Virus record (IMG/VR): IMGVR_UViG_3300036770_007547
Span: 124,001 to 188,000 of that record
Length of the DNA: 64,000 nucleotides
Reading direction: 5' to 3' (one strand)
The translations under genes and the position numbers were made by a program. A model generated the notes under the pieces. The model worked only from the letters and a program-made list of their open reading frames with translations, ran no database searches and was not told where the DNA came from. Below are positions 9,383 through 45,191 of this stretch, one piece after another. The first letter of the stretch is position 1. Every line of letters begins with the position of its first letter.

Positions 9383-9967
9383 TTATAGATCCTTTCCAGT
9401 ATTTATACGTTCCAAAAAAGACTCGATTGGCAGATGAGAGATGTTTGATACACGATCCAGATCTAGATGTCGTGCTGTGGTAGGACCTTGCACACGCACA
9501 AATTCTCGATCTGGAAAATCATTGGCCACACGCACCAACTGGCGTATCCAGTTTCCGGTGTAAGTTGGTGCGGCACCTTGTGGTTTGTAGTTGTCGGTAC
9601 CAGCATACAAATTGTTGAACTTGCCGTCTTGGTTGGGCCCAAGATCAAATCCCAAGAGATAGATGCGTCGATGACGATCTTGCGCAGCTATGGCCACAGC
9701 GATGGGGCCTGAACTGAATCCAAAATAGGGTTTTGGCACTGGCTCAGCTCCGAGATCGGGCAAGGGGCGTCGTGTGTAAAATCTATTTTCTCGACTGTAT
9801 CCACTTTCTTGTATGACTCGGGCGATGGGGTGATCTGTGGCTATCAGGGCTGTGACTCGATGTGTGCGATACAAGGCGTTGCACCCATACACCCGGCCAA
9901 GAGTCATGAGATGGTCAATGTCGATGTTTTCACGGCTCACGCCGTTGCCTAACACAAATGCTGTCAT
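9383..9967 (-). CDS. Maf/DUF115-like (GT42/GT29-type Rossmann fold) glycosyltransferase-like protein
   Basis: AFVLGNGxS, YGCNALYR, FSSGPIA and IYLLGFD motifs are typical of this superfamily. Confidence 0.6.
   Translation of the reverse strand: MTAFVLGNGVSRENIDIDHLMTLGRVYGCNALYRTHRVTALIATDHPIARVIQESGYSRENRFYTRRPLPDLGAEPVPKPYFGFSSGPIAVAIAAQDRHRRIYLLGFDLGPNQDGKFNNLYAGTDNYKPQGAAPTYTGNWIRQLVRVANDFPDREFVRVQGPTTARHLDLDRVSNISHLPIESFLERINTGKDL
9400..9407 (-). promoter_or_regulatory. T4 late promoter, perfect TATAAATA
   Basis: Exact consensus 17 nt upstream of the ATG at 9382. Confidence 0.75.
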
Positions 9968-15406: not shown

Positions 15407-15414
15407 TATTTATA
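15407..15414 (-). promoter_or_regulatory. T4 late promoter TATAAATA containing the portal stop codon
   Basis: Exact consensus. The TAA of gp20 lies inside it. Confidence 0.75.
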
Positions 15415-17205: not shown

Positions 17206-20200
17206 CTAGTTAGCTTGTGCTTGCAGCAACTTCTCCACGGTGCGATTGTTGTCGCGCTGTAGTCCCACAAGATTTTCCAATTGCCGCACAAGATCGCTCA
17301 TGTTCTGCATCTCGACCGGTATTGGCGATGTGTTGCGTAGATTACCGGCAGGCCCCAACAACGATGAAGGTTCAGTTTCGGGAATTTCGGGTTTATTGGG
17401 TGTAGTTGTGTCGGTGTCCAGGCTTGCGTTCACTGTGGTGATGCGATTTTGTATTTCTGCCATTGCTTGTGGCACAAATTTATCAAAACCTCCAATGCTG
17501 TCACCAAACAAACCCATGCCTGAGATAGCTTCTTGACTTTTCTGATTGAACTGACCCATGCCTGTGCCGAGTCGATCAAATCCAAGACCCATGCCTTTGC
17601 TGAGTTCGGCTATGCCACGCTGCTGTGCTTCGTATTGCTCTCGAGTGGCCTTGCGACCATTCACGGTGTACTCTACTCGTTCAGTGGCAGCTTGTTTTTC
17701 AGCCAATCTCAGTTGATCTATGGCTTTTTTGCTGTCACCAAACAGTGTGTCCCAGATGCGATCAAAGAATCCTGGCTTGGCCGTGGGCGGCTCAGCCTTG
17801 TCAGTGCGCTGACCAAAAGTGGCAAATCCCTGTCCAAGGATACGTTTGAGTTCACCAAAAGGATCGTTGACAAATCTCATGGGTATGGATTTGCCTTGCA
17901 AAGGTATCACAGCTTCGGGACCGGCTTCACCTGCGATGCTGGGGCCTTGGGTGATGCCGCCCTTGGCCATGAAATTTTGGCTCAGTTGTTCTAGAGTTTG
18001 CAAAGGTTTGGCTTGGGTAGCGGCTGCCACATCAAGTCCACGATTCACAGCTTCCTGGGTGGACTGGGACAGGATCTCAGCCATCCGTTGCACTTCGGCA
18101 CGGAAACTTTGGCTGTCATTGCGTGATGTCTCAACGATCTCGCTTCTGGTCAGCAGTTTGAGTGTGCCATCAAGCCGTGAGATCTTTTTGATGAGAGCAT
18201 CATTGTCAAGACCTTTGATGTCCACTGGTATGCGCCGGCCATCAGGCAAGGGCACAAAGGCTTCGTTCTGGCCGGCCTCGGCGGCAGTGACCTGCACACC
18301 GCCTGGGCGGGCTGGTATCACCCCACCGTCACGCATGTAAATGTGCGGTGGATCACCAAAGCTGGCACCCCACTTGAATCCGTACTTGTTCAACAAACCC
18401 GACTGTGCCAGGAACGAAGCTTCGTTGGAATTGATGTCAACCGCCATGCCTTGCTGATGTTTGCTCATGCCAGGTGCAGCACGTGGTCTACCACCCGAGT
18501 TGATTCTCGCTTGTTCTTCCACGCTGCGGTAAGCTGAATTGATGCTGAGCACTCGGCCAGTGAGTTGCTGATACTCCGCGCCCATGTTGATCATGGCCTG
18601 CTGCACCGCGGGATTTAATTTTTCAAAATGGTTTTCGCTGCCGGTTCCAGATCCAAATCGGAACAGATCCTGCACACTTGATCCCACCGAAGGTGCTCCT
18701 CCACCACTGGCTCGCGGTATCTGAGCCTGTCCGCCTTTGGGAGCCGGCACAGCTGGCGCGGTGGCTGATCTTGTGCCCACATTGCCAGTAGCGGGAGCGG
18801 ATCTTTGCATGGCTCCCGCGGCCTGTGCAGGTTTGGCAAAATTCTGTTGGGCTTGTATCGTGGCAGATGCCAGTGCCTGCTGTTTTTCCTGTTCGGTGAC
18901 GCGAGCAAACAGTCCCTTGCTCTGACGCAGTATCTTGAGTTTCTGCTCAAACAGTTCCGTGCGTCTTTCCACGTATTTGCGATAGTTTTCGTTGTCTTTT
19001 TGGGCAAACTCAGCATCGTCAAACACATAGTCAAGGGATTTCTTGATCTCGTCGATCTCTTGCTGGCGGATAGCCGCCAAAGCATCGGCTTGATTTGATC
19101 GTTCGCCGGTCAGTTTTTGCCACCAAGACAAATCTTGGTCCACACGTGTCTGGGCTAGATCGCTGGCATCTTTGGCTGTGCGAGCTTGCTGTTGCTCGTG
19201 TTGAATCTGTATCTTGCGCTGGGCTGCGCCAGCACGATTGGCACGTTCGTAGAACTCGTTCCGTGCCTGTTCCTCGGCGGCCTGCTGGATGCGCATGCGC
19301 TCGAATTGCGCTTGATTCGGGCGCATTTTTTCCAAGCGACCTTGTTCGGTGCGTAGCATCTCCCGGCGAAGTTCGTTGATTCGTGATTGATACTGCTGAA
19401 ACCCTTCGCGATCGTTTTCGGCGAACGTCGCGTTGCTCCAGGTGGCCTCTTCGGTCACGCGAGTGCCACGTGTGATGGCTTTTTGTGATTCCAGTTGCTT
19501 GGCAGCTTGATCCACGGCCTGTGCTGCAAGTCCCGTTTGCTGCTGTTTGTTGCTCCAGAGGCGATCCCACCAAGATGCTTCTTTTTGGGCCTGTTCTATG
19601 GCCTGTTGTGTTGCTTGTTTCCGTGCATCGGTTTGTTTTTTCTCGCTGTCACCGGTGCCGCTCTCTTGCTTGTTGTTGCGTTGTTTTTTGTTGTCGACCA
19701 AGCCATAGTCAATGAGACCAAAGTAGCCGGCTGCGCCGCCCAGGGCCGCACCAATACCAGCACCTATGGCTGTCCCAACACCCGGAATGATGCTGCCTAT
19801 GGCAGCACCGGCTGTGCCCAGTGTGGTGGCCCCGGCTGCTGCGCCAACCTTTCCAGTTAGAGCGCCGGTCTTTTCGTCGGTGATTCCGCCCAGGGTGCCT
19901 GATTTTTGCAACACCGACGCATCGCTCAGCGTGGGTATGTCCATGCCAGTTTCTTTGGCCACGTGGCGTATGAAATCGTTGAGTGCGCCGGTGAATTGAT
20001 TCACAGCCTCAGCGGCTGCTGGCATGGCTGCAAACGCAAATGTATCCATCTGACGTGCCAGCTGATCCATGCTCTTCTGCGCATCCACAGTGCTGTCGGT
20101 CAAAGGATCGGTACCTTTGCGCATCTGAGCTTCTTGCTCGTTGGCCAGTCGCACCTGACCGTCAATGATCCGGGCGTTGACTAGATCGCTTTTCTGTGCA

Positions 20201-21858
20201 TAATTGGTCATGACACCGGCCGAGTCGCCCGTGGCTTTGGCGAGATCTCGGCTGGTCTGCATGTTGCGGGACGTGGCTTCTTGCAGTTCTTTGAAGGCCT
20301 GTATCTGATCAATGTGTCCGGCCTTGAGACGATTCATGATGTCCACCGATGCACCACCGGTGTCCACAAACAGTTTTTGTGCTGCTTCGGTGTTGACAAA
20401 TCCCGCTGCTACATCACGGAATCCTTGCCCCATCTCAGGTGCGGCCTTGCTGACCATGGTCTGGAAGTCCAGCATGGCCTTGGCTTCTTTTTCTCGGCCC
20501 TGGGCCACCATCTCGTCGTACTGAGCACGGAATCTAGCTTCGCCCAATGCAGCATCTTGCTGGGATTGGATTTCTTTGCGCTGCATGCCAGTGAGCTTGC
20601 TGAGTTGATCCAGCTCCTTGGCATACTGCATGGCACCTTGTGTGAGCTGTGCGTTGGTCTTGCGCTGGGAAAGACCCAGTCTGGTCTGTTGTGTTACAAA
20701 AGCACCAGCAGTGTCGCTGATGTCGCTGGCACTGAAGCCCAGGCGACGCAGTTGATCACCAAGATCGCTGCGAGTGATGTCGCCCACAAACTTGGAAAAT
20801 CGTTTGGCGCCCTCGCCCACGGTGCCACCAAATCGTGCCAGGGCCGAGGAATTTTCAGCCACAGCACGCTTGTAATCGTCGAGACTGACACCGCTTTCAA
20901 TGAACTGGCGTTGCAGTTCGGTCATGCCACCTGCGGTCAGCGCACCAACTGAACTGACATCACGGAACGCTTCTGCGGCTTTTTGCAGGCGGTCCAACAC
21001 AAACTTGGAACCTTCGGCGGCCAACTGTAGCGACCCCGAAAGAACAGTGCCCAATATGGGTATGCTTTCCAGCATCTTGCCCAAGGACTGGACCACGCCA
21101 TCGATCACGCCGTTGAACTGTGTGAATCCTTTGGTGCTGTCGCCTATCGACAGCAGGCCTTTGCCCAGGCCAACCATGGTCTTGCTGGCGCTTTCTGCGG
21201 CCGATTGCACACGGAGCATCGCCATCTGCACTGCCATCGCGGTCTGGGCATTCTTGGCCAAGCTCGGGCCCAAACGGCTCTTGATGATCATGTCGCCGAA
21301 ACGACCCAGGCGAGATTCTAAGCTGCTGTACTGGTCGATCTGCTTGATGCGTTCCTTGGCCAGCATCTGGCCATAATTGCGTTCATAGCCGATCTTTTCA
21401 TACTGATCTCTGAGTTCGGCTTGCAGAGCTTTCCAACGTTCGGCCTGTAGCTCTTCGGCCTTGCGCTTTTCATAGGCCGCACGTTCCTCGGCGCTCATGC
21501 GAGCCGTGCGAGCAGCATCTTGCTGGGCCTGTGCTAAAGACGCTGCCGAATCAGCGGCTTCCTGATCGGCTTTGGCTTTTTCGATCGAAGCATCGATCTC
21601 GTCTTTGACAGCGTCTGTGGCACGATCCACGGCCTTGACGAAATCTTGCAGTTCTCGATCGGCTTTGGCGCGTGTGACTGTGTCTTTCTTGATCTGGCTG
21701 CCCAAGCGTGCCAGCGCCTGCACTATGCGTTCGGTGCCACGATCAAATTTGCGAGCCGAGTCCTGGCCCGAGGCACCGGTGGTGCCCATTCTGCGAGCCA
21801 CTTGGACAAATTCTTTGAGCTGTGTTACTAGTTCGTCAATGTCATATTGATCGGCCAT
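17206..21858 (-). CDS. Tape-measure-like protein with a peptidase M15 (Zn D-Ala-D-Ala/L-Ala-D-Glu peptidase-type) domain
   Basis: Long Ala/Gln-rich helical ORF with a Gly-Ala hydrophobic stretch, SAYRS..EQ, SKH..GMAVD and DPPH motifs, and two GG...GEAGPEAVIPL-type motifs. Confidence 0.75.
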   Translation of the reverse strand: MADQYDIDELVTQLKEFVQVARRMGTTGASGQDSARKFDRGTERIVQALARLGSQIKKDTVTRAKADRELQDFVKAVDRATDAVKDEIDASIEKAKADQEAADSAASLAQAQQDAARTARMSAEERAAYEKRKAEELQAERWKALQAELRDQYEKIGYERNYGQMLAKERIKQIDQYSSLESRLGRFGDMIIKSRLGPSLAKNAQTAMAVQMAMLRVQSAAESASKTMVGLGKGLLSIGDSTKGFTQFNGVIDGVVQSLGKMLESIPILGTVLSGSLQLAAEGSKFVLDRLQKAAEAFRDVSSVGALTAGGMTELQRQFIESGVSLDDYKRAVAENSSALARFGGTVGEGAKRFSKFVGDITRSDLGDQLRRLGFSASDISDTAGAFVTQQTRLGLSQRKTNAQLTQGAMQYAKELDQLSKLTGMQRKEIQSQQDAALGEARFRAQYDEMVAQGREKEAKAMLDFQTMVSKAAPEMGQGFRDVAAGFVNTEAAQKLFVDTGGASVDIMNRLKAGHIDQIQAFKELQEATSRNMQTSRDLAKATGDSAGVMTNYAQKSDLVNARIIDGQVRLANEQEAQMRKGTDPLTDSTVDAQKSMDQLARQMDTFAFAAMPAAAEAVNQFTGALNDFIRHVAKETGMDIPTLSDASVLQKSGTLGGITDEKTGALTGKVGAAAGATTLGTAGAAIGSIIPGVGTAIGAGIGAALGGAAGYFGLIDYGLVDNKKQRNNKQESGTGDSEKKQTDARKQATQQAIEQAQKEASWWDRLWSNKQQQTGLAAQAVDQAAKQLESQKAITRGTRVTEEATWSNATFAENDREGFQQYQSRINELRREMLRTEQGRLEKMRPNQAQFERMRIQQAAEEQARNEFYERANRAGAAQRKIQIQHEQQQARTAKDASDLAQTRVDQDLSWWQKLTGERSNQADALAAIRQQEIDEIKKSLDYVFDDAEFAQKDNENYRKYVERRTELFEQKLKILRQSKGLFARVTEQEKQQALASATIQAQQNFAKPAQAAGAMQRSAPATGNVGTRSATAPAVPAPKGGQAQIPRASGGGAPSVGSSVQDLFRFGSGTGSENHFEKLNPAVQQAMINMGAEYQQLTGRVLSINSAYRSVEEQARINSGGRPRAAPGMSKHQQGMAVDINSNEASFLAQSGLLNKYGFKWGASFGDPPHIYMRDGGVIPARPGGVQVTAAEAGQNEAFVPLPDGRRIPVDIKGLDNDALIKKISRLDGTLKLLTRSEIVETSRNDSQSFRAEVQRMAEILSQSTQEAVNRGLDVAAATQAKPLQTLEQLSQNFMAKGGITQGPSIAGEAGPEAVIPLQGKSIPMRFVNDPFGELKRILGQGFATFGQRTDKAEPPTAKPGFFDRIWDTLFGDSKKAIDQLRLAEKQAATERVEYTVNGRKATREQYEAQQRGIAELSKGMGLGFDRLGTGMGQFNQKSQEAISGMGLFGDSIGGFDKFVPQAMAEIQNRITTVNASLDTDTTTPNKPEIPETEPSSLLGPAGNLRNTSPIPVEMQNMSDLVRQLENLVGLQRDNNRTVEKLLQAQAN

Positions 21859-21871
21859 GGTTTTCTGCGCC

Positions 21872-21898
21872 TATAAATAACTGCATCTAGATATTTAT
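21872..21898. promoter_or_regulatory. Face-to-face late promoters serving divergent genes
   Basis: TATAAATA on + at 21872-21879 and ATAAATA on - at 21892-21898. Confidence 0.75.
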
Positions 21899-21911
21899 TA
21901 GCGAGGATCCC

Positions 21912-22748
21912 ATGGAAACCAATCCCTTACGCCAGTATTTCCGGCAACCCGCCATCTATGTAAAATTGCCATCTGGCGGCAAATACTACCCCAAAGACAG
22001 CCTGGAGGTCACCGAAAACGGAGAGTATCCGGTGCTGCCCATGACCACCATGGACGAGATCACTTACCGTACACCAGATGCCTTGTTCAACGGCACTGCT
22101 TCGGTGAATGTGATCCAGAGCTGTGTGCCCAACATCAAAAATGCCTGGCACATGCCCAGCATGGACATTGACACTGTGCTGATAGCCATACGCATAGCCA
22201 GTTATGGTCATGAACTCAAACTGGACACCCAGTGCACCAAGTGTGCCAGCATCAACACGTTTGGCGTGGACTTGCGCACAGTGATGGAACGCATGCGTGC
22301 TCCGGACTACAGCCAGACCCAGACCCTGGGTGACCTCGAAATCTATTTCAAACCCATGGATTATCGGCAGATCAATGACAACAACATGATGCAGTTTGAA
22401 GACCAAAAGATGCTGCAAATGCTACAAGATGCCAACGTCAACGACGAGGACAAGCTGCGTCAAGTCGGTGATGTGCTGCGGAAAATCACCAGCATGACCA
22501 CACGGGCCTTGGCACAAAACATTGCCATGATCAAGACTCCCCAGGCCACAGTGACCGAGATCGAGTGGATCTCCGATTGGCTGGAAAACTGCGATCGTAG
22601 CACGTTTTCCAGCATACGCGATCACATCATCAACACCAAGCAGCAGGGCGAGCTACAGCCGCTGAAGATACAGTGCCCAGACTGCCAGAACGAGTACGAG
22701 CAACCATTCACCTTGGACATGGCAAATTTTTTCGCGGACGCCTCCTGA
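21912..22748 (+). CDS. Baseplate hub/tail assembly chaperone (gp26-like)
   Basis: YVKLPSGG, PMTTMDE, DIDTVLIAIRIASYG, two CxxC motifs and a C-terminal NFF. Confidence 0.8.
   Translation: METNPLRQYFRQPAIYVKLPSGGKYYPKDSLEVTENGEYPVLPMTTMDEITYRTPDALFNGTASVNVIQSCVPNIKNAWHMPSMDIDTVLIAIRIASYGHELKLDTQCTKCASINTFGVDLRTVMERMRAPDYSQTQTLGDLEIYFKPMDYRQINDNNMMQFEDQKMLQMLQDANVNDEDKLRQVGDVLRKITSMTTRALAQNIAMIKTPQATVTEIEWISDWLENCDRSTFSSIRDHIINTKQQGELQPLKIQCPDCQNEYEQPFTLDMANFFADAS
22724..22733 (+). other. Putative -1 ribosomal frameshift slippery site (A AAT TTT / T TTT TTC)
   Basis: Two overlapping in-frame X XXY YYZ heptamers 4-5 codons before the stop. The -1 frame is open to 22963. Confidence 0.7.
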
Positions 22749-22963
22749 CCCTAGATGCTGACCGCATCACCAAATGGATTGATCAGATGGAAAAGGAGGC
22801 CAAGATCATCCGCGCCGAAACTCTCAAAATGTGCTGGCACATGCGTGGTGGTCTCAGCTACACCGAGGCCATGAATCTCAGCCAGGGCGAACGCGACGAG
22901 ATCGCTACCATGATCAAAGATCATCTGGAAACCACCAAGAAAAGCGGATTACCTTACTTTTAA
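22724..22963 (+). CDS. gp51-like C-terminal chaperone module, probably expressed as a frameshift extension
   Basis: -1 frame KFFRGRLL...CWHMRGGLSYTEAMNLSQGER. The TAA overlaps the next ATG. An independent start at ATG 22787 is possible. Confidence 0.65.
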   Translation, partial: KFFRGRLLTLDADRITKWIDQMEKEAKIIRAETLKMCWHMRGGLSYTEAMNLSQGERDEIATMIKDHLETTKKSGLPYF

Positions 22964-23466
22964 TGGATCAAGTGCAGGCCAGAATTGATGTCACGAACTG
23001 GATCACTGGATTCGTGGAAAAACCTTCGCCGTTGTTGAATGGATGGCCGCCGTGTCCCTATGCTCGGCAGGCCCGGCTAGAGAATCGCGTGGATATACGC
23101 ATGGGATCTCACCCCTATCACGATCTCGAGCAGCTGGCAACACAGGGCTTGGGCGATCTAGACGTGGTGGTGCTGGTGTACGATCCCGGTCAATTTGATC
23201 TGCTCACGTTCCGCAAACACTGGCAATCGGCACAGCAACATCTGCATGCCCGTGGCCTTTTGGTGCTGGAAGATCATCCCAGCGAGCCCGAGATGGTGCG
23301 CGGAGTTTGCATGAATCAAGGCACCTGGGCTTTGTTGTTTGTGCAGGACCTCAAGCGGCTCAACGATGCTGCCCAGCAGCTGGCCACCAAAGGTTACTAT
23401 CACAATTGGCCGCGCGAGTATCTCAACGATCTGTTCCAAGGTCGTGCAGATCCAACACAGACTTGA
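22963..23466 (+). CDS. DUF1415-like protein (167 aa)
   Basis: TAATG-coupled start. W..GFVE...PCPYA and EDHP motifs resemble the DUF1415 CPFA/FHP motifs. Confidence 0.5.
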   Translation: MDQVQARIDVTNWITGFVEKPSPLLNGWPPCPYARQARLENRVDIRMGSHPYHDLEQLATQGLGDLDVVVLVYDPGQFDLLTFRKHWQSAQQHLHARGLLVLEDHPSEPEMVRGVCMNQGTWALLFVQDLKRLNDAAQQLATKGYYHNWPREYLNDLFQGRADPTQT

Positions 23467-24109
23467 TACGGCTGTCTCGATCACACAACCACTGGTAGTG
23501 TTCAACGTCGTTGCTCCAGGCCGATCCGGTCCACCATTCAAATCCGGCCACACGACTCTTGTAGCGATTCACACGTTCGTAGCCGGGTCCCATGTACACC
23601 CAACGATAGCCGTGCCGACGAGCCCAGGCCAATTCGTGTTCCAGTGTTCGCAGGCCCAGTTTTAGATCGGGCTCGCGATAGTCCCAGGCAAACAGCACAG
23701 TTTCGATGGACCAAGGCGAATAGGGTCTCAGCTTGCTCCAGGCCACGAGATCGCCGCGCCAATCACGATAACCCATGTACACATCATTGGCCAGATCATC
23801 GTTGACTTCAAAGTACTTGCGGAATCCTCGATGCAGGCAGTAGGCCGAGTAGATGTGATCCAATTCGGTGCGCGGTACTGGATCCAGTATCTCGGCATCC
23901 GGCATGATGTCGTAGGTGATGGCGCTGAGATCACAGCGAGTGCTGCGACTCTGATACCATCGCGGCTGTCCTTGATGAGCAGTGGCCAGCCAGCCTAGAT
24001 TGATGGCCTCTTCGTGTTCGTGTGGTTGTACATCTGTGAGCTCGGCGCGATAGTGATAGACTTCGCCTTTTTCCACCAGACCAAAACTGTGATCAAACGT
24101 GAGATTCAT
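23423..24109 (-). CDS. Aminoacyl-tRNA-protein transferase-like protein (ATE1/Bpt family, GNAT fold)
   Basis: GW near the N-terminus, and LGLRTLEHELAWARRHGYRWVYMG.GY....RYK..V.GFE matches the ATE C-terminal signature LG....E...A...G....YLG......YK. Confidence 0.7.
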   Translation of the reverse strand: MNLTFDHSFGLVEKGEVYHYRAELTDVQPHEHEEAINLGWLATAHQGQPRWYQSRSTRCDLSAITYDIMPDAEILDPVPRTELDHIYSAYCLHRGFRKYFEVNDDLANDVYMGYRDWRGDLVAWSKLRPYSPWSIETVLFAWDYREPDLKLGLRTLEHELAWARRHGYRWVYMGPGYERVNRYKSRVAGFEWWTGSAWSNDVEHYQWLCDRDSRIKSVLDLHDLGTDR

Positions 24110-24146
24110 CGTAAGTAATTATCTATAGACATAAAGGTACAGCAAA

Positions 24147-24479
24147 ATGGACATCTATCATGTATGGGCCGACAAGCAAGAAGGCATCTCTGACACCGAA
24201 TGGGTGACAAACATGCGAGCATTTTTTGATCATCTAGTCAGCGAAGCACGCATGGAAAGCTATCGCATCACACGATGCAAGATGGGATTCCGCAGCATCG
24301 CGGACTTGCCGGAATGGCATATCATGATGGAATTTCGTGACATGGCACAACTCGAGCAGTGCTTTCAACGAGTAGCTCCACGCGAAGGTGAACTCGAAGA
24401 CAAGCATCGCAGTTTCAATCAGTTCGTGTCAGGAAATATCCAGCATGCGTTGTTCCGGGATTGGCCCGATCAGTTATGA
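24147..24479 (+). CDS. DUF6614-like protein (110 aa, probable ferredoxin-like alpha/beta barrel)
   Basis: YHVW, YRITRCKMGF, EWHIMME...QLE..F and LFRDWPD pattern, recalled from this family. Confidence 0.55.
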   Translation: MDIYHVWADKQEGISDTEWVTNMRAFFDHLVSEARMESYRITRCKMGFRSIADLPEWHIMMEFRDMAQLEQCFQRVAPREGELEDKHRSFNQFVSGNIQHALFRDWPDQL

Positions 24480-24553
24480 GATCTACTGCGTAGATCTATC
24501 GATTTCGCTGCGCTCATCGATGTTTTTTTTATTGGACCGAGCGCAGCGAGTTC
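24478..24553. other. ssDNA hairpin cluster with two inverted GAGCGCAGCGA (primosome-assembly-site-like) motifs; may also terminate transcription
   Basis: AGATCTAC-N3-GTAGATCT; ATCGAT-[motif]-ATCGAT on -; GGAC-[motif]-GTTC on +; T8 run between the two copies. Confidence 0.5.
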
Positions 24554-24554
24554 A

Positions 24555-24929
24555 GCGTATCATCCAGATGCAACGGTCACACTTAGCCCGTTGCCGGGCC
24601 AAGAAAAAACTGAGGCATCATCCGAGTGCATCACAGTCACACAGCGTTAGAGCTACGAACAGACTTGTTCACGTAGGCGGTTGTCCGGTACCTACTCACT
24701 CCGTCTTATCACAACGGCAACACAGGTGTCGTACGCTGTCACGACGCATGTGCCTGGGGTTTCGCTCCCCTCATTGGGCCTTTTGTATCCTTTTCAAACA
24801 ACCAAACGGCAGGTCTTTGCCATCGTCATCCCGGGGGGTAGTGGTTGAGTGCCCACTGGTGCGGTGGGTCTTCCATCCCTGCGACTCGGGGTCCAGGTCT
24901 AGGGCACAAGAAATTGGCCTGTGCGAGCC
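24555..24929 (-). ncRNA. Putative large structured non-coding RNA (~370 nt) with a pseudoknot
   Basis: About ten consecutive stems, G-U pairs and a GCAA tetraloop that favour the minus strand, and a 7-bp loop-to-distal complementarity. This is the only long gene-free stretch in the window. Confidence 0.65.
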
Positions 24930-25364
24930 TTAACTACCTAGTTTGCCTTTGATGTGTGATCCATGTACTCGAACCTGTATGTGACCATTGTAGTATTCGT
25001 CTGATTCCAGTACTCGTCGTGCAAATTGTTCGCGTGCTTCGATGTAACTACATTCGGCCTTGGACCTACAGTAGTACAAGATTTCGCGTTGGAAATTTTC
25101 GGTGCCCAGTCGTTCCACGTCTTGATTGAGTTCGTCGTTGCTGCCGTAATAGGTCTGCCAGTCTGAATCGATTTTGTTGCTTATGCGTTTGCGTTTTTTG
25201 TTGCCATTCTTGAGTTTGACCACACGATACGTGGTTTTCTTGAACTTGCTGAGTTTTTTGCCTATGTATTTGCGCCCTGACACTAGATTCGTGATGAGAT
25301 AAACGAAGCCCACATACTCTTCGCCGATGTGTTCCACCACATTTGATTCGAACAGCCAGGTCAT
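24930..25364 (-). CDS. Single-domain GIY-YIG nuclease (T4 endonuclease II-like)
   Basis: GFVYLITN...KYIGKK, YYGS, F.REIL, E and YYN motifs. 144 aa, with no separate DNA-binding domain. Confidence 0.85.
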   Translation of the reverse strand: MTWLFESNVVEHIGEEYVGFVYLITNLVSGRKYIGKKLSKFKKTTYRVVKLKNGNKKRKRISNKIDSDWQTYYGSNDELNQDVERLGTENFQREILYYCRSKAECSYIEAREQFARRVLESDEYYNGHIQVRVHGSHIKGKLGS

Positions 25365-25403: not shown

Positions 25404-26450
25404 CTACCATTCTGTGGTGTGCTCCTGATCTTTTAATTTTGCTCGTGTGCATTTGCTCCTGCATTCATGGCTGTCAAATTCCAGGAACTCCGTGGACCAA
25501 AACTCGTCGTTTTTGATGTCGGTGAGATTCCTCTGCCAGAGATCAAATCGGCTGGCACGATCATGCCAGACTTGATTGTGATCGTAACGGTTGGCAGTCC
25601 AACAGCAGGGATATATCTGTCCTCGGCTGTTTAAAAACACGCCTTTGTTGCCGATCAAGCAGATGCCCGAATAGGGCGTGTTGCTTTCCAACTGCTGTGC
25701 TCGCTGCCAAAACAATGTTTTTATGTCTTGGCCCGGCCTTGATCTCCGAGTAAGGCGCACATGATTGCGTTCGAATCGATGTCCATCGGGCACTAGGCCC
25801 GGTTGGGTAGGCTCCAGCAGATCTATGCTACCATACTGTTCGGGATATTTACTACCAAATTTGGTGCTACGAGTGAGCTGATAAAGGTCAAACCCCAACT
25901 GCTGTGCCAGGCTTTGCTGCTGGCCCAAATGATATTCATTGAATCTAAATGCGATGCTGTCCCACACTCGATAAGTGCTGGTGTTCACTGATGCAAACGC
26001 TGTGATGCCTGCGATGATGCTGTCCCAGTCCGAGTTCACGCGATATTGCTGATTGCTGTCTTGATCCCAACCATCCAGGCTCCAGTGTACCTCGTCGTGT
26101 TCGCCCAGCACATGCCCCAGATATTGCCACCAGTCTGGTGGTTTGTAACTGCCATTGGTGATGATGGTGATGGCCACTGTGGGATTCAGGGTCTTGAACC
26201 ATACACAGATGTCCACGAGATCGCGACAGTAGATGGGATCTCCGTCGTTGCCGCAGAACGTGATCTTTTTCAGTTCCTGCACATGCTCGGCGCCAAACTG
26301 GCGTTGGAAAAACGCCAAAGTGAGTTGTCGATTCAAGAGACTGTCGGGCAATTCGGCCCTGGGACATCTCGGGCATTTCAATGCGCATATCGAACTGGGT
26401 TCGATATGCCAGTGATCCCATTTCAGCACAGCTTTTCCTCTCGCTGCCAT
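25404..26450 (-). CDS. Radical SAM protein with a Twitch/SPASM-like C-terminal domain
   Basis: CALKCPRC, CGNDGDP, ITNG, SLDG and YPCCW...C...C motifs. The true start may be GTG 26429. Confidence 0.9.
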   Translation of the reverse strand: MAARGKAVLKWDHWHIEPSSICALKCPRCPRAELPDSLLNRQLTLAFFQRQFGAEHVQELKKITFCGNDGDPIYCRDLVDICVWFKTLNPTVAITIITNGSYKPPDWWQYLGHVLGEHDEVHWSLDGWDQDSNQQYRVNSDWDSIIAGITAFASVNTSTYRVWDSIAFRFNEYHLGQQQSLAQQLGFDLYQLTRSTKFGSKYPEQYGSIDLLEPTQPGLVPDGHRFERNHVRLTRRSRPGQDIKTLFWQRAQQLESNTPYSGICLIGNKGVFLNSRGQIYPCCWTANRYDHNQVWHDRASRFDLWQRNLTDIKNDEFWSTEFLEFDSHECRSKCTRAKLKDQEHTTEW

Positions 26451-27319
26451 TGATCTTGGAAAGCAGTGACATCATGATCGGTGCCACAAGTGCTCAAGCA
26501 AGTTGGTTCGGGGCTGTTGGTATTCCACGACGCTTGCACAGCATCAAAGTCTGTGACATAGTTTTTCAGTCGATTGCCCAGCCAGCAACAGGGATGTATG
26601 CGTCCGCGACAATCCATGTAAAGGCTCTGCTCGTTCAAGGCATGGCATCGTATCTGTTTTTTTCCCGAGCGTGGCTGCGCCCAGTTCACCGGAGCTTCAA
26701 GCCCCGACAGCATGGGCCTCCGAGACACCTTGGCTCGGAACCAACTGAACCCCATGAGGCGCGCGAGATCTCGGCATTCATCGACTTGATGTTGATTGTG
26801 CTTGAACACCAGCATGTCCCAATGCGCTCGTCCACCGCCCGAAATAAATGCTTCCACGTTGGCGATCACTCGACGCCATTCCACACCGCGACGATACACA
26901 GCATTGGTGTCGTCCAGTCCGTCGATGCTGAACACCACGTAATCTTGTTCGCGGTTCATGATACGACCCAGCTCGTACCACCAAAACGTGCCTTGCACAC
27001 CACCATTGGTGTTCATGCCCAGCGTGATGGTGGGATTCTTTTGCCGGAACCAACGATAGATGGCCTGCGTGTTCATGCCCGCTGCGGGATCTCCGTAGTT
27101 TCCACACATGAACATCTTGTCCAGACCCGATATGAATTCGTCGTTGAATTGGGCAGCGATCTGTTCCACACGCAGATGATGGTGCCTGCGCCGATCAAAA
27201 TCAGCGTCGGTTTCTCGACTGCATTGAGCACAGCGTGCCTGGCACACGTCGGTGGGCTCGAGGTGCAGTACTCGTATGTTACGTGATGTCCACGTCGGTG
27301 TTGTAGCTGGTGAATCCAC
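26423..27319 (-). CDS. Radical SAM protein with a Twitch/SPASM-like C-terminal domain (paralogue)
   Basis: CQARCAQC, CGNYGDP, NTNG, FSIDG and HPCCW...C...C motifs. Start codon uncertain. Confidence 0.9.
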   Translation of the reverse strand: MDSPATTPTWTSRNIRVLHLEPTDVCQARCAQCSRETDADFDRRRHHHLRVEQIAAQFNDEFISGLDKMFMCGNYGDPAAGMNTQAIYRWFRQKNPTITLGMNTNGGVQGTFWWYELGRIMNREQDYVVFSIDGLDDTNAVYRRGVEWRRVIANVEAFISGGGRAHWDMLVFKHNQHQVDECRDLARLMGFSWFRAKVSRRPMLSGLEAPVNWAQPRSGKKQIRCHALNEQSLYMDCRGRIHPCCWLGNRLKNYVTDFDAVQASWNTNSPEPTCLSTCGTDHDVTAFQDQWQREEKLC

Positions 27320-44600: not shown

Positions 44601-45191
44601 CCCGAGCCAGCACCGCCCACCATCTCGGACCTTACTGCGGCCTACAACACACTCAACGAATACAAGATGGTGTCAGACAACATCGTTCTCAATTCAGTGA
44701 CGTTCAAGCCTTTGTTTGGTGCCAAGGCAGCCACCGAGCTGCGCGGTATCATCAAAGTGGTGCGTGCCCAAAACACCGTGGCTTCGGACAGTGAAATCAA
44801 GAGCCAGGTCATATCAAACATCAACAACTATTTCACCATCGACAAATGGGACTTTGGCGACAGCTTTTTCTTCTCGGAACTGGCAGCATATTTGCACGAG
44901 CGCCTGGGCTCCATCATCAGTTCAGTGGTGCTGGTGCCATTGAATCCGCTCAAAACTTTTGGAGACTTGTACGAAATACGTTCAGCGCCCAACGAAATTT
45001 TCGTCAGCGCAGCCACAGTCAGCGATGTGGAAGTCATTGATGCTCTCACACAAACCAACATCCGTAGTCAGACCAGCGTGGCTGGTTTGTATCCGGTAAG
45101 TACATTGGGATCACCGTCACAGACGGTGGGTCAAGCTGGAACCACACCGTTGGTGACTGGTAACAGCGGAACAGATTACGGGACTATTTGA
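41676..45191 (+). CDS. gp6: Baseplate wedge subunit (gp6)
   Basis: DFETLR, ENFLDTAERRDSV..LA...GY.P, FGDG.F and ESI.EIK..AP.....QNR.V..EDY motifs. Confidence 0.9.
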   Translation: MAKTTRQTAIFGVEDWKRLYQTYREADFQSYDFETLRKSFVDYLRLYYPESFNDYIESSEFIALLDVMAFMGQALAFRNDLNARENFLDTAERRDSVVRLANLVGYTPKRNVPAEGYIKIMSVSTSESITDFNGVNLSNVTIDWDDPANPNWLEQFTTVVNAALVDSQKYGRPGNRQTIQGVDTDEYTINLVPGFLPVIPYVSIVDGVSMPFEVVSATSTGKNFIYEPAPQPSGAFNMLYRNDGQGFGSNDTGFFFLFKQGVLQNQDFNLAEALPNRVVNINIEGCNQNDHWLFKLDDVGSIESEWQYVDNVFAGATEQLAPDQRKFYTITSRTNDQISLRFGDGVFSSIPVGIFRAYVRASNGLEYIINPEEMQNILLPISYISRRGRLETITFTCSVMSPVTNAQARESIAEIKQRAPARYYTQNRMVNGEDYNNFPFTQFNSIIKSKAVARSSIGTSRYVDLTDITGKYSSTNIFGSDGMIYRENTLPSVEFTWLNRNDIVDTIKNSVEPLISSRGMLQFYYQNFPRPSLSVLNAGWQQSTTLVNETTGFFYQGNSTRPLPIGPYTSNNAQYVTVGSLVKFVPPSGYFFDANNRLRAGTPTRADEKLVVWATVTNVVLEGTNQGLGNLPNGVGPVTLNNFVPTGALAELVIPKFSIDLPDSLEQQMIQQIELYRNFAIGYDNLNSTWYLIISSNLNENAVFSRTYAKNTQGLNLDASWLVQFTTDGVTYTVNSRSLDYKFASVLQTRFFYAGSGQVYDNKTGSVINDFVNVLKVNALPDSNLPLPTDIVMDIIGQPLQSDGFVNDYEVVISYKDSDADGVADDPDFFETIVAPNVSPANKLVFFQQVTDFDNLERYLPLTPGEVNSGFDTVQDIELVKAEFINGQIFYARTQNTFWELKIELINGLITRTLVPRLDFLARIGRGDLAFQYRHNSPLTNVIDPGTTNIIDLYLVTDSYYTQYQNYIKDTTGSVPEPAPPTISDLTAAYNTLNEYKMVSDNIVLNSVTFKPLFGAKAATELRGIIKVVRAQNTVASDSEIKSQVISNINNYFTIDKWDFGDSFFFSELAAYLHERLGSIISSVVLVPLNPLKTFGDLYEIRSAPNEIFVSAATVSDVEVIDALTQTNIRSQTSVAGLYPVSTLGSPSQTVGQAGTTPLVTGNSGTDYGTI

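What the first reader, a model, noticed from the sequence alone, without database searches (positions are those of the whole stretch)
23423..24109. Phage-encoded aminoacyl-tRNA-protein transferase (N-degron writer)
Seen: an ATE/Bpt-like C-terminal signature in a compact 228-aa protein that lacks the usual N-terminal Cys cluster, preceded by a late-like ATAATTA. Established: Bpt and ATE1 add Leu or Arg from charged tRNA to N-terminal Asp/Glu and route proteins to N-degron proteolysis. Inference: the phage may redirect host ClpS/ClpAP against host or defence proteins, clear acidic scaffold fragments released by gp21, or aminoacylate a non-protein substrate.
Basis: partly seen in the sequence, partly recalled or inferred. 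Interest (0 to 1): 0.7.

Follow-up and report, generated by a model that had tools for sequence, protein, structure and literature searches.

The report
Phage ATE/Bpt-like aminoacyl transferase
An uncultured giant T4-like phage carries a stripped-down relative of the enzymes that tag protein N-termini with an amino acid taken from charged tRNA; it is always paired with a heme-oxygenase-like gene, and the phage also encodes its own ClpS/ClpP degradation parts, so it may write a new kind of degradation tag or make a modified amino-acid product.

Summary
The 228-aa ORF (23423-24109, minus strand) is real and belongs to the ATE1/Bpt superfamily. Alone it is weak against Pfam ATE_C (E 0.0045, below cut-off). 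However, 49 of 61 homologues hit ATE_C, the family profile finds solved ATE1 and canonical Bpt, and a confident model (pLDDT 91) aligns over its whole length with Bpt and ATE1.

It is a phage-specific branch: 346 IMG/VR stretches, almost none in prokaryote genomes or cultured phages.

- **Kept:** the ATE1 active-site Tyr-Lys, the Trp, and an invariant Glu159 at the position where ATE1's Glu277 reads arginine (Bpt has Gln).
- **Lost:** the four-Cys metal site, the RRSG arginine that reads acidic N-termini (here Leu41), and, in this clade, the basic tRNA-groove helix.

The gene is convergently paired with a DUF6875 ("cytochrome P422")-like protein in 81 of 88 loci, and with DUF6614 in 63. The same phage encodes ClpS, two ClpP and a ClpX-like ATPase.

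Best reading: an aminoacyl-tRNA-dependent transferase, probably for a basic residue, acting on a non-canonical acceptor. The classical "Asp/Glu N-degron writer" is only partly supported. The ATAATTA is at chance level. It is a new variant of a known kind.

The parts
23423..24109 (-). ATE/Bpt-like transferase gene ('ATEL'), 228 aa. It has an N-terminal beta-rich domain (about residues 1-60, no Cys), a GNAT core, and a conserved C-terminal GFEWWTG..WS / Y..LC.RDS tail.
   Evidence: ORF. Pfam ATE_C, weak. Family-level ATE_C hits. Profile against PDB ATE1. hhalign against Bpt. AF2 model with pLDDT 91. Fold matches. Conserved residues.
22963..23466 (+). Conserved convergent partner gene ('p168'), 167 aa, DUF6875/DUF1415 ('cytochrome P422')-like. 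Cys31-Pro32, Asp104-His105-Pro106 and Glu110 are invariant. Its start overlaps the stop of the upstream gene in the gp26-like baseplate operon.
   Evidence: Adjacent and convergent to ATEL in 81 of 88 loci. 20 of 24 family members hit Pfam DUF6875, best 9.7e-7. Atlas and AFDB fold matches to DUF1415/DUF6875 with TM 0.55-0.80. AF2 pLDDT 95.8. No solved fold found in this PDB copy. The P422 chemistry is taken from bioRxiv 10.64898/2025.12.11.692455.
23423..23466 (.). 44-bp overlap of the 3' ends of the two convergent genes. The same tail-to-tail overlap recurs in the related loci.
   Evidence: Coordinates. Partner offsets of +646 to +661 from the ATEL start, for ATEL genes of about 680 nt.
24147..24479 (+). 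Divergent neighbour gene, 110 aa, Pfam DUF6614 (function unknown). By language-model features it is near the DUF4286 / DUF6974 / HapK-like small alpha+beta proteins.
   Evidence: Pfam E 3.5e-23. Divergent neighbour of ATEL in 63 of 88 loci. Atlas features, a lead only.
24110..24146 (.). 37-bp divergent intergenic region between ATEL and DUF6614. It holds ATAATTA (24116-24122, -) and TATAGATA (24120-24127, -, one mismatch to the late motif). No sigma-70-like site was scored here.
   Evidence: Sequence. Motif counts against shuffles. Promoter scan.
21872..21879 (+). Exact T4-type late promoter motif TATAAATA ahead of the co-directional run gp26-like baseplate gene (21912-22748), a conserved ~96-aa ORF (22673-22963), and p168. 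The partner gene is therefore probably expressed late (inference).
   Evidence: 3 exact matches against 0.25 expected, all before structural genes. Gene order.

Best explanation
The gene encodes a phage-specific, zinc-free, compact branch of the ATE1/Bpt superfamily of aminoacyl-tRNA transferases. It most likely takes an amino acid from a charged tRNA and puts it on a free alpha-amino group.

Shown:
- Homology and whole-length fold similarity to Bpt/ATE1.
- Strict conservation of the ATE1 active-site Tyr-Lys (Y183-K184), W142 and Y90, and of a Glu (E159) at the position of ATE1's arginine-binding Glu277.
- Loss of the Cys4 metal site, of the acidic-N-terminus-reading Arg, and (in this clade) of the basic tRNA-groove helix.
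- A strongly conserved tail-to-tail pairing with a P422-like (DUF6875) gene.

Inferred:
- The donor is a basic residue (Arg or Lys), because the pocket is Thr/Ser-Ser/Thr-Glu as in ATE1, not Ala-Ala-Gln as in Bpt.
- The acceptor is not a classical Asp/Glu N-terminus. A Leu plus aromatic residues (W40, L41, W51, Y52) and two invariant arginines (R55, R58) line the place of the RRSG pocket.
- The enzyme acts together with the neighbouring heme-thiolate oxygenase-like protein.

Acceptor: I slightly favour a protein or peptide N-terminus. In that case a new N-terminal basic residue could be passed by host Aat to the phage's own ClpS and on to Clp proteolysis. A small-molecule or amino-acid acceptor is the alternative. 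This last choice is open.
For: - Sequence: (ATE_C, solved ATE1, canonical Bpt).
- Fold: Bpt, TM 0.58-0.66 by query, over model residues 2-199 in most rows and up to 228 in a few; ATE1 Z 12.6-14.3 over residues 1-228 with 206-211 aligned, against Z 11-12.7 over the core only for MprF/FemX.
- Residue map: HMMER alignment to klAte1, hhalign to Bpt and Bpt-to-human-ATE1 alignment, read with the mutagenesis data of PMC9351520. E277A/K is dead and E277D active; R80E is dead; the penta-Glu alpha3 mutant is dead; Bpt has A/A/Q/L in the donor pocket.
- Conservation: E159, Y183, K184, R55 and R58 are invariant in 61 homologues. Among 96 sequences (P0001 plus 95 50%-cluster representatives), E159 is kept in 79, K184 in 95, R58 in 91 and R55 in 90.
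- Distribution: 346 IMG/VR stretches, 550 representatives at E<=1e-3, only 4 hits on short MAG contigs among the 185,579 species genomes of genome contigs, and none in 50,697 cultured-phage records.
- Partner.
- Clp parts in the same phage. ClpS is also in 4 of 10 other ATEL-bearing records, including the most complete one.
Against: - No biochemical datum exists.
- The single sequence is below the Pfam and NCBIfam cut-offs.
- The helix that ATE1 inserts into the tRNA acceptor-stem groove is missing. Residues 59-79 hold 0 Lys/Arg and 5 Asp/Glu. The family is acidic (median pI 5.6, against 8.3 for Bpt). tRNA may therefore be bound differently or not at all.
- The N-terminal part of the alignment to Bpt has low per-column confidence, so the 'Leu41 replaces R80' assignment rests on the GW/GF anchor and the secondary-structure order.
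- Fold Z-scores for acyl-CoA GNATs (10.5-11.8) are not far below ATE1.
- ClpS is never adjacent to the gene, and it occurs in relatives without it.
- Many of the 88 loci are near-identical copies, so the pairing count overstates independence.
- The fold-based complex test with the partner gave no answer (see Tried and rejected).
Confidence: 0.5

Rival explanations
1. Canonical N-degron writer. It adds Leu or Arg to N-terminal Asp/Glu of host, defence or scaffold-derived proteins and so sends them to ClpS/ClpAP.
For: All characterised ATE1/Bpt members do this (PMC9351520). The whole-length fold match includes the substrate-binding N-domain. The phage encodes ClpS, ClpP x2 and a ClpX-like ATPase. 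Phage ClpS has been proposed to feed host ClpAP (PMC7824862).
Against: The Arg essential for reading the acidic side chain (klAte1 R80; RRSG is kept in Bpt and human ATE1) is Leu/Ala in all 61 homologues, and never Arg in 96 sequences. The donor pocket is not Bpt-like. There is no linkage to ClpS. No Aat and no ClpA N-domain were found in the 64%-complete record.
Confidence: 0.15
2. Small-molecule pathway enzyme. Together with the P422-like heme-thiolate oxygenase (and perhaps DUF6614), it ligates an amino acid from aminoacyl-tRNA to a free, possibly oxidised, amino acid such as a tryptophan derivative. This would make a modified dipeptide-like metabolite during infection.
For: - The pair is kept in 81 of 88 loci, including at least eight different neighbourhoods where the rest of the synteny is lost (L003, L058, L062, L064, L075/76, L080, L081, L082/83).
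- Characterised DUF6875/P422 enzymes hydroxylate free L-Trp or form C-S bonds.
- In L003 a Trp-halogenase gene lies 2.3 kb away. P422 ThnD/ThdM are also clustered with a Trp halogenase.
- The acceptor pocket has turned hydrophobic/aromatic.
- Aminoacyl-tRNA-dependent GNAT-fold ligases of small molecules exist and are among the fold hits (Sba18/Sbb17, Z about 11). GNAT ligases sit beside heme amino-acid hydroxylases in the argolaphos cluster.
Against: ATE1/Bpt, not the small-molecule ligases, are the closest relatives over the whole length. The two genes are convergent, not co-transcribed. The window's own partner protein does not itself reach any Pfam hit, and its substrate motifs differ from the published Trp-binding motifs (sequence). 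No metabolite is known.
Confidence: 0.25
3. It is not an aminoacyl-tRNA enzyme. It is either an acyl-CoA-dependent GNAT acyltransferase, or a non-catalytic ATE-fold protein (for example a binder or decoy of N-termini or of tRNA ends).
For: Loss of the tRNA-groove helix and an acidic pI. Acyl-CoA GNATs (VipF, NMT) score Z 10.5-11.8. Two of 61 homologues also touch Acetyltransf_6.
Against: The strongest and only whole-length matches are ATE1/Bpt. The cleft residues that ATE1 uses for the tRNA 3' end and the aminoacyl moiety are invariant, which argues for retained catalysis. The segment at the GNAT pyrophosphate-binding loop reads K-L-G-L-R-T, the reduced form also seen in ATE1, not Q/R-x-x-G-x-G/A (sequence).
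Confidence: 0.1

Closest known systems
Bacterial Bpt (aspartate/glutamate leucyltransferase; Pfam ATE_N + ATE_C)
   Same: Same size class (about 230-250 aa) and the same two-domain fold over the whole length (TM 0.58-0.66). hhalign E 7e-7. Shared G-W/F anchor, the Arg of the V-R strand (R58), the Y-K pair, and the P/F-x-E..G..W tail.
   Different: - No Cys4 site (Bpt has 4 Cys).
- RRSG becomes L-A/x.
- Donor pocket is T/S, S/T, E, V/F instead of A, A, Q, L (PMC9351520).
- The basic helix (4-7 K/R in Bpt) is replaced by an acidic loop.
- pI 5.6 against 8.3.
- Extra conserved C-terminal helix.
- Phage-only distribution.
- NCBIfam equivalog score 14 against a cut-off of 170.
Eukaryotic ATE1 arginyltransferase (PDB 7WFX/7WG1, 8E3S, 7TIF, 8TZV)
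   Same: Top solved-structure match (Z 12.6-14.3, 206-211 residues aligned, 18-19% identity to klAte1). The profile hit covers the catalytic core. Glu277, Trp260, Ser255/Ser273 (as Thr/Ser) and Tyr303-Lys304 equivalents are conserved.
   Different: Less than half the length. It lacks the variable domain, the Cys4 zinc (or Fe-S) site, R80, His178 (not conserved) and the alpha3/alpha-f tRNA helix.
Cys-less ATE_C proteins of candidate-phyla-radiation bacteria (e.g. P0215, annotated 'N-end rule aminoacyl transferase C-terminal domain-containing protein')
   Same: Retrieved by the same profile (E about 1e-15). They also lack the Cys cluster and share the ...RS.R... strand and the YK...GFE motif. 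ATE_C is above the cut-off.
   Different: They keep the S-x-ENRR basic helix motif and have a hydrophobic residue where the phage family has Glu159 (sequence). They are cellular, not viral.
Other aminoacyl-tRNA-dependent GNAT-fold transferases: FemX, MprF synthase domain, Sba18/Sbb17 peptide synthases
   Same: Shared GNAT core and cleft (Z 10.5-12.7). They show that this fold can aminoacylate lipids, cell-wall precursors or small molecules.
   Different: Only the core (about residues 30-195) aligns. They are tandem-GNAT proteins without the ATE-type N-domain.
Cytochrome P422 / DUF6875 (for the partner gene)
   Same: Pfam DUF6875 hits in 20 of 24 family members. Fold TM 0.55-0.8. Invariant Cys-Pro at the place of the published RxGxVCP heme-ligand motif.
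   Different: Shorter (about 167 aa against 180-300). The Gly spacing in the motif differs by one residue. The published Trp-binding motifs are not evident. Heme binding is untested.

Membership tests
ATE1/Bpt aminoacyl-tRNA-protein transferases (Pfam ATE_C PF04377) | ATE_C sequence signature at or above the curated cut-off | tested here: inconclusive
   The window protein scores 18 bits against a cut-off of 25. 49 of 61 homologues hit at E<=0.01, some above the cut-off (P0070 27.2, P0069 29.7 bits). Family profile against solved ATE1 gives E 2.5e-4. hhalign against Bpt gives E 7e-7.
ATE1/Bpt aminoacyl-tRNA-protein transferases | Two-domain architecture: an ATE-type N-terminal substrate domain packed on a GNAT core | tested here: met
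   Model pLDDT 91. Bpt models align mostly over residues 2-199, TM 0.58-0.66. ATE1 aligns over residues 1-228, Z up to 14.3. No Pfam ATE_N sequence hit.
ATE1/Bpt aminoacyl-tRNA-protein transferases | Four-Cys metal (Zn or Fe-S) site in the N-domain (CxxC ... CC / CxxCxxC) | tested here: not met
   No Cys in residues 1-58. The positions are occupied by H7/F9 and W51/S54. Nine Bpt have 4 Cys each.
ATE1/Bpt aminoacyl-tRNA-protein transferases | Arg of the G-W/F-R-R-S-G motif (klAte1 R80) that reads the acidic N-terminal residue | tested here: not met
   Position 41 is Leu in 55 of 61 and position 42 is hydrophobic. No Arg at either position in 96 sequences. The motif is kept in Bpt and human ATE1. 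Caveat: column confidence in this part of the alignment is low.
ATE1/Bpt aminoacyl-tRNA-protein transferases | Basic helix (klAte1 alpha3 / scATE1 alpha-f) that enters the tRNA acceptor-stem major groove | tested here: not met
   Residues 59-79 hold 0 K/R and 5 D/E, with only a 3-residue helix in the model. Bpt have 4-7 K/R here. More distant phage clades keep 6-8 K/R.
ATE1/Bpt aminoacyl-tRNA-protein transferases | Cleft residues for the tRNA 3' end and catalysis (klAte1 Y173, W260, Y303, K304) | tested here: met
   Y90 (56 of 61), W142 (49 of 61) and Y183-K184 (61 of 61). K184 is kept in 95 of 96 sequences.
ATE1 (arginyl) versus Bpt (leucyl) donor pocket | ATE1: Ser255, Ser273, Glu277, Tyr289. 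Bpt: Ala, Ala, Gln, Leu. | tested here: met
   Met for the ATE1-type pocket: T/S137, S/T155, E159 (61 of 61) and V/F171. The Bpt-type pocket is not met. Which amino acid is actually used cannot be tested here.
ATE1/Bpt aminoacyl-tRNA-protein transferases | Aminoacyl-tRNA-dependent transfer to a protein N-terminus | not testable with these tools
   Needs an in vitro assay. No RNA or protein data were found.
Bpt equivalog (NCBIfam NF002346) | Whole-protein score above the curated cut-off | tested here: not met
   14.4 bits against a cut-off of 170.
Leu/Phe-tRNA-protein transferase Aat (PF03588) | Leu_Phe_trans domain | tested here: not met
   No hit for the protein or anywhere in the phage record.
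Acyl-CoA-dependent GNAT acetyltransferases | Motif A pyrophosphate loop Q/R-x-x-G-x-G/A, and best fold matches to CoA-bound GNATs | tested here: not met
   The loop reads K-L-G-L-R-T, as in ATE1. CoA GNATs rank below ATE1, MprF and FemX and cover the core only.
Cytochrome P422 / DUF6875 (partner gene 22963-23466) | DUF6875 profile match and the Cys-Pro heme-ligand motif | tested here: inconclusive
   The window copy has no Pfam hit, but 20 of 24 orthologues hit DUF6875 (best 9.7e-7). C31-P32 is invariant. Fold TM is 0.55-0.8. Heme binding is not testable here.

The most novel reading that the evidence does not exclude
The transferase, the P422-like heme-thiolate protein and DUF6614 form a phage-borne 'oxidise, then aminoacylate from tRNA' module. 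There are two possible forms. (a) A viral, oxygen- or heme-dependent N-degron branch. It would be analogous to the eukaryotic Cys-oxidation then ATE1 arginylation route, and would hand substrates to the phage's own ClpS. (b) A tRNA-dependent synthesis of a modified (for example hydroxy-tryptophan-containing) dipeptide metabolite by a virus.
Probability: 0.2. Interest if true: 0.85.

Novelty: new variant of a known kind. Interest (0 to 1): 0.66.

Why it matters
Phage-encoded ClpS and ClpP have been noted in jumbo phages (PMC7824862, PMC6102473). In the full-text library searched I found no report of a viral N-terminal aminoacyl transferase.

If the enzyme is active, it would be the first viral member of the ATE1/Bpt class. 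It would also be a natural minimal version that works without the metal site, the acidic-residue reader and the tRNA-groove helix. That bears on how these enzymes pick their donor and acceptor.

An Arg/Lys-type donor pocket in a bacterial virus, in a host group that normally has Aat, Bpt and ClpS, would define a new 'tertiary' destabilising step that is directly testable.

The tight pairing with a member of the newly described P422 heme family instead points to tRNA-dependent metabolite chemistry in a virus. Either outcome would be new biology for a family with hundreds of environmental members.

Tried and rejected
- **Complex prediction.** ATEL with the P422-like neighbour: no answer (score 0.15, mark 0.32). 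This is not evidence either way.
- **Single-sequence searches.** PHROGs, PDB by phmmer and tblastn against 50,697 cultured-phage records found nothing.
- **Late-promoter claim.** ATAATTA is at chance level. The sigma-70 and terminator scan of 22700-24600 gave nothing above shuffles.
- **Expression data.** Only DNA runs hold the locus (best: a subsurface metagenome, probably the source). No RNA run was listed.
- **Solved fold for the partner protein.** No match with E<=0.001 in the PDB copy. The published P422 structure (9X39) was apparently not in the library, or was not matched.
- **Genome-level link between ATEL and ClpS.** The two are never adjacent (17-123 kb apart in five records). ClpS also occurs in PA5oct-, Phosso- and Atu_ph07-like phages that lack ATEL. 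Co-occurrence is therefore consistent but not discriminating.
- **Other recurrent neighbours.** A roughly 370-450-aa ORF lies directly upstream of ATEL in five rearranged loci, and a 164-aa ORF lies downstream in the most divergent clade. Neither has a Pfam hit, and neither matches the partner-family HMM.
- **Polynucleobacter-1 RNA.** I considered it as part of the module and rejected this: it is absent from 10 related loci.
- **Unpublished genome.** One genome in the Bpt survey (G042) is unpublished.
Full report
**What is there**

The window is part of a 222,775-bp IMG/VR virus record (window = bases 124001-188000; CheckV completeness 64%). It is a large T4-like phage.
- It has a T4-type portal (Pfam 1.9e-102), a gp26-like baseplate protein and a gp46-like SbcC.
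- The portal is 51-53% identical to those of the jumbo phages Phosso, PA5oct and Atu_ph07.
- The finding's coordinates hold a 228-aa ORF on the minus strand, 23423-24109, starting at ATG, with a stop three codons upstream.

**Is the ATE/Bpt signature real?**

For the single sequence it is marginal.
- Pfam ATE_C: E 0.0045, 18 bits against a cut-off of 25, residues 107-174.
- NCBIfam arginyltransferase: 14 bits against 170.
- No PHROG hit and no PDB hit by phmmer.

At the family level it is solid.
- A word-index search gave 69 homologues of 221-295 aa, nearly all unnamed metagenomic proteins.
- 49 of the 61 I aligned (alignment A1) hit ATE_C, best 2.8e-9.
- The A1 profile finds solved ATE1 structures (7WFX/7WG1 at E 2.5e-4; 8E3S and 7TIF at 8e-4).
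- hhalign of A1 against nine canonical Bpt taken from gammaproteobacterial genomes aligns the full length (E 7e-7, probability 85%).
- An AlphaFold2 model is confident (pLDDT 91, pTM 0.87).
- Its best matches among reviewed proteins are all Bpt, mostly over model residues 2-199 (TM 0.58-0.66).
- Among solved structures ATE1 is first by Foldseek and by VIA-align (Z 12.6-14.3, residues 1-228, 206-211 aligned, 18-19% identity to klAte1).
- The other aminoacyl-tRNA-dependent GNATs follow (MprF, FemX, Sba18/Sbb17; Z 10.5-12.7, core only), then acyl-CoA GNATs (Z 10.5-11.8).

**Which defining features are kept?**

I mapped the published klAte1 residues (PMC9351520) through three alignments: the HMMER alignment to 7WFX (chain numbering = native + 4), the hhalign alignment to Bpt, and a Bpt-to-human-ATE1 alignment.

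Kept:
- Y183-K184 (= Y303-K304) in 61 of 61 homologues.
- W142 (= W260) and Y90 (= Y173).
- The donor pocket T/S137, S/T155, E159 (61 of 61) and V/F171. ATE1 has S255, S273, E277 and Y289; Bpt has Ala, Ala, Gln and Leu.
- In klAte1, E277A/K kills activity and E277D keeps it, which is read as binding of the arginine side chain. An invariant Glu here is my basis for inferring a basic donor. It is an inference.

Lost:
- The four-Cys metal site. There is no Cys in residues 1-58, while the nine Bpt have four each.
- The first Arg of G-W/F-R-R-S-G (klAte1 R80; R80E is dead, and the motif is also conserved in Bpt). It is Leu in 55 of 61 homologues, and never Arg among 96 sequences.
- The basic helix that ATE1 puts into the acceptor-stem groove (the penta-Glu mutant is dead; the cryo-EM complex is described in PMC10115844).
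  - In the window's clade the segment is 21 residues with 0 K/R and 5 D/E.
  - More distant phage clades keep 32 residues with 6-8 K/R, and Bpt have 4-7.
- The family is acidic (median pI 5.6) whereas Bpt is basic (8.3).

New family hallmarks are Q53-x-R55-S-T-R58 and the G-F-E-W-W-T-G...W-S tail.

**Distribution**

The family is viral.
- 346 stretches in IMG/VR encode a relative.
- There are 550 50%-identity representatives at E<=1e-3.
- Only four hits were found among the 185,579 species genomes of genome contigs, all on short MAG contigs.
- None were found in 50,697 cultured-phage records.
- The nearest cellular relatives retrieved are Cys-less ATE_C proteins of candidate-phyla-radiation bacteria. 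These keep the basic helix motif and lack the Glu.
- A few phage members have been auto-labelled "arginyl-tRNA--protein-N-Asp/Glu arginylyltransferase" by IMG.
- I found no paper on a phage ATE/Bpt. The jumbo-phage survey that discusses phage ClpS and ClpP does not mention one.

**Neighbourhood**

tblastn of the window's neighbours against all 88 loci then held shows two recurrent partners.
- A 167-aa gene (22963-23466, +) lies tail-to-tail with the transferase, overlapping by about 30-45 nt, in 81 loci.
  - The pair persists where the transferase is only 31-40% identical.
  - It also persists where the T4-core synteny (baseplate, portal, gp46) is gone: L003, L058, L062, L064, L075/76, L080, L081 and L082/83.
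- A DUF6614 gene (24147-24479, +; Pfam 3.5e-23) lies head-to-head in 63 loci.
- Many loci are near-duplicates, so the independent count is lower.

The 167-aa protein is DUF6875/DUF1415-like.
- 20 of 24 orthologues hit DUF6875, best 9.7e-7.
- Atlas and AFDB fold matches have TM 0.55-0.80. The model has pLDDT 95.8. No solved match was found in the PDB copy.
- A 2025 preprint renames DUF6875 "cytochrome P422". These are Cys-ligated b-heme enzymes that hydroxylate free L-Trp at N1, C6 or C7 or form a C-S bond. They carry an essential Cys in an RxGxVCP motif, and some are clustered with Trp halogenases.
- The phage family has an invariant C31-P32 in L-x-G-W-P-P-C-P-Y-A, plus invariant D104-H105-P106 and E110.
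- In L003 a Trp-halogenase gene lies 2.3 kb from the pair.
- The partner gene follows the gp26-like gene and a small conserved ORF on the same strand, behind an exact TATAAATA (21872-21879). It is therefore probably late.
- The transferase has only TATAGATA, one mismatch.

**Proteolysis genes in the same phage**

Outside the window, the record encodes several proteolysis-related genes.
- ClpS: PF02617, E 1.5e-24, 104 aa.
- Two adjacent ClpP genes: 5.3e-80 and 1.1e-28.
- A ClpX-like AAA_2 protein.
- No Clp_N and no Aat were found.
- A permuted betaproteobacterial-type tmRNA is also present (ARAGORN tag ANDEVFALAA; Rfam beta_tmRNA 116 bits).

ClpS is found in 4 of 10 other ATEL-bearing records, including the 86%-complete one. 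The records without it are 27-49% complete. ClpS also occurs in cultured relatives without the transferase, and it is never adjacent to the transferase. This makes an N-degron role more plausible but does not single it out.

**Mechanism**

I commit to an aminoacyl-tRNA-dependent aminoacyl transferase of the ATE1/Bpt type (about 0.5).
- The donor is probably Arg or Lys.
- The acceptor is not the classical Asp/Glu N-terminus.
- It works together with the P422-like protein.

For the acceptor, family precedent and the phage's ClpS slightly favour a protein N-terminus. In a betaproteobacterial-type host, a new N-terminal Arg or Lys could be extended by Aat and then read by ClpS. That pathway is established for E. 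coli-type Leu/N-degron systems; its application here is inference. The tight pairing with an enzyme family that acts on free tryptophan keeps a metabolite-forming role nearly as likely.

Rivals, tests and refuters are listed in their own sections. The complex prediction gave no answer. No expression data exist.

**Novelty**

This is a new variant of a known kind: a large, virus-only, metal-free, helix-less ATE/Bpt branch with an ATE1-like donor pocket and a conserved heme-protein partner.

Noticed in passing
window 24796-24929 (-): Strong match to Rfam RF01718 'Polynucleobacter-1 RNA' (111 bits, cut-off 37, E 3e-24). It starts one base after the stop of the segE-like GIY-YIG gene, in the 450-nt gap before DUF6614. 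It is absent from 10 related loci, so it is not part of the transferase module. Together with the tmRNA type, it hints at a Polynucleobacter-like betaproteobacterial host.
   Followed up: partly
G000:C1:24158-24472 (-) = L102:1477-1791; G000:C1:10214-11332; G000:C1:25812-26393 (same phage record, outside the window): The phage encodes its own ClpS (104 aa), two adjacent ClpP paralogues and a ClpX-like ATPase. An Hsp20-like gene and a ribosomal-protein-bS21-like gene lie next to ClpS (identified by reading the ORF translations, not by a family search). No ClpA N-domain and no Aat were found in the 64%-complete record.
   Followed up: partly
G000:C1:215689-216081 (-) and 220144-222574 (= L111): A phage-borne two-piece (permuted) tmRNA of the betaproteobacterial type, tag ANDEVFALAA (ARAGORN; Rfam beta_tmRNA 116 bits, tmRNA_permuted 123 bits). 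A cluster of seven tRNAs follows: Leu-CAA, Pro, Thr, Met, Arg-UCU, Lys-UUU, Ile.
   Followed up: partly
window 9400-9407, 15407-15414, 21872-21879 and about ten NATAAATA sites: The T4-type late promoter core TATAAATA occurs 3 times against 0.25 expected. One-mismatch NATAAATA sites sit directly upstream of most structural genes (24 against 13.9 expected). This phage therefore appears to use T4-like late transcription.
   Followed up: partly
window 45188-60148 (+): A single open reading frame of 4,986 codons, preceded by ORFs of 1,171, 900 and 850 codons on the same strand. Not analysed.
   Followed up: no
window 25404-26450 (-) and 26423-27319 (-): Two tandem, overlapping radical-SAM-like genes (phrog_21308; Pfam Radical_SAM 3.6e-8 and 2.2e-4) lie between the segE-like gene and gp46. 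They are present in only 24 of 88 related loci, so they form a variable accessory cassette.
   Followed up: no
window 24930-25364 (-): A SegE-type GIY-YIG homing-endonuclease-like gene (Pfam 3.9e-32). Its distance and orientation relative to the transferase vary between related loci, as expected for a mobile gene.
   Followed up: no
L003:4670-12606 (359,566-bp JGI contig): In a very large contig the DUF6614-transferase-P422-like trio sits in a different setting. Its neighbours are a Trp-halogenase-like gene, Fe-superoxide dismutase, an Fe-S biosynthesis protein, an IF1-like protein and, further on, a porin-like gene.
   Followed up: no
L058:4874-5977, L062:4796-5977, L080:4790-6001, L081:4766-5968, L086:4358-5704: In five rearranged loci a homologous 370-450-aa ORF without any Pfam match lies immediately upstream of the transferase. 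In L080 it is co-directional and abuts the start codon. It may be a further module component.
   Followed up: partly
window 17206-21858 (-): A 1,550-aa ORF next to the portal gene, behind an AATAAATA site at 21892-21899. It is Gln/Ala-rich and coiled-coil-like. Read by eye, its C-terminal third has a cell-wall-peptidase-like stretch, so it is presumably a tail-length or hub protein. Not tested with tools.
   Followed up: no
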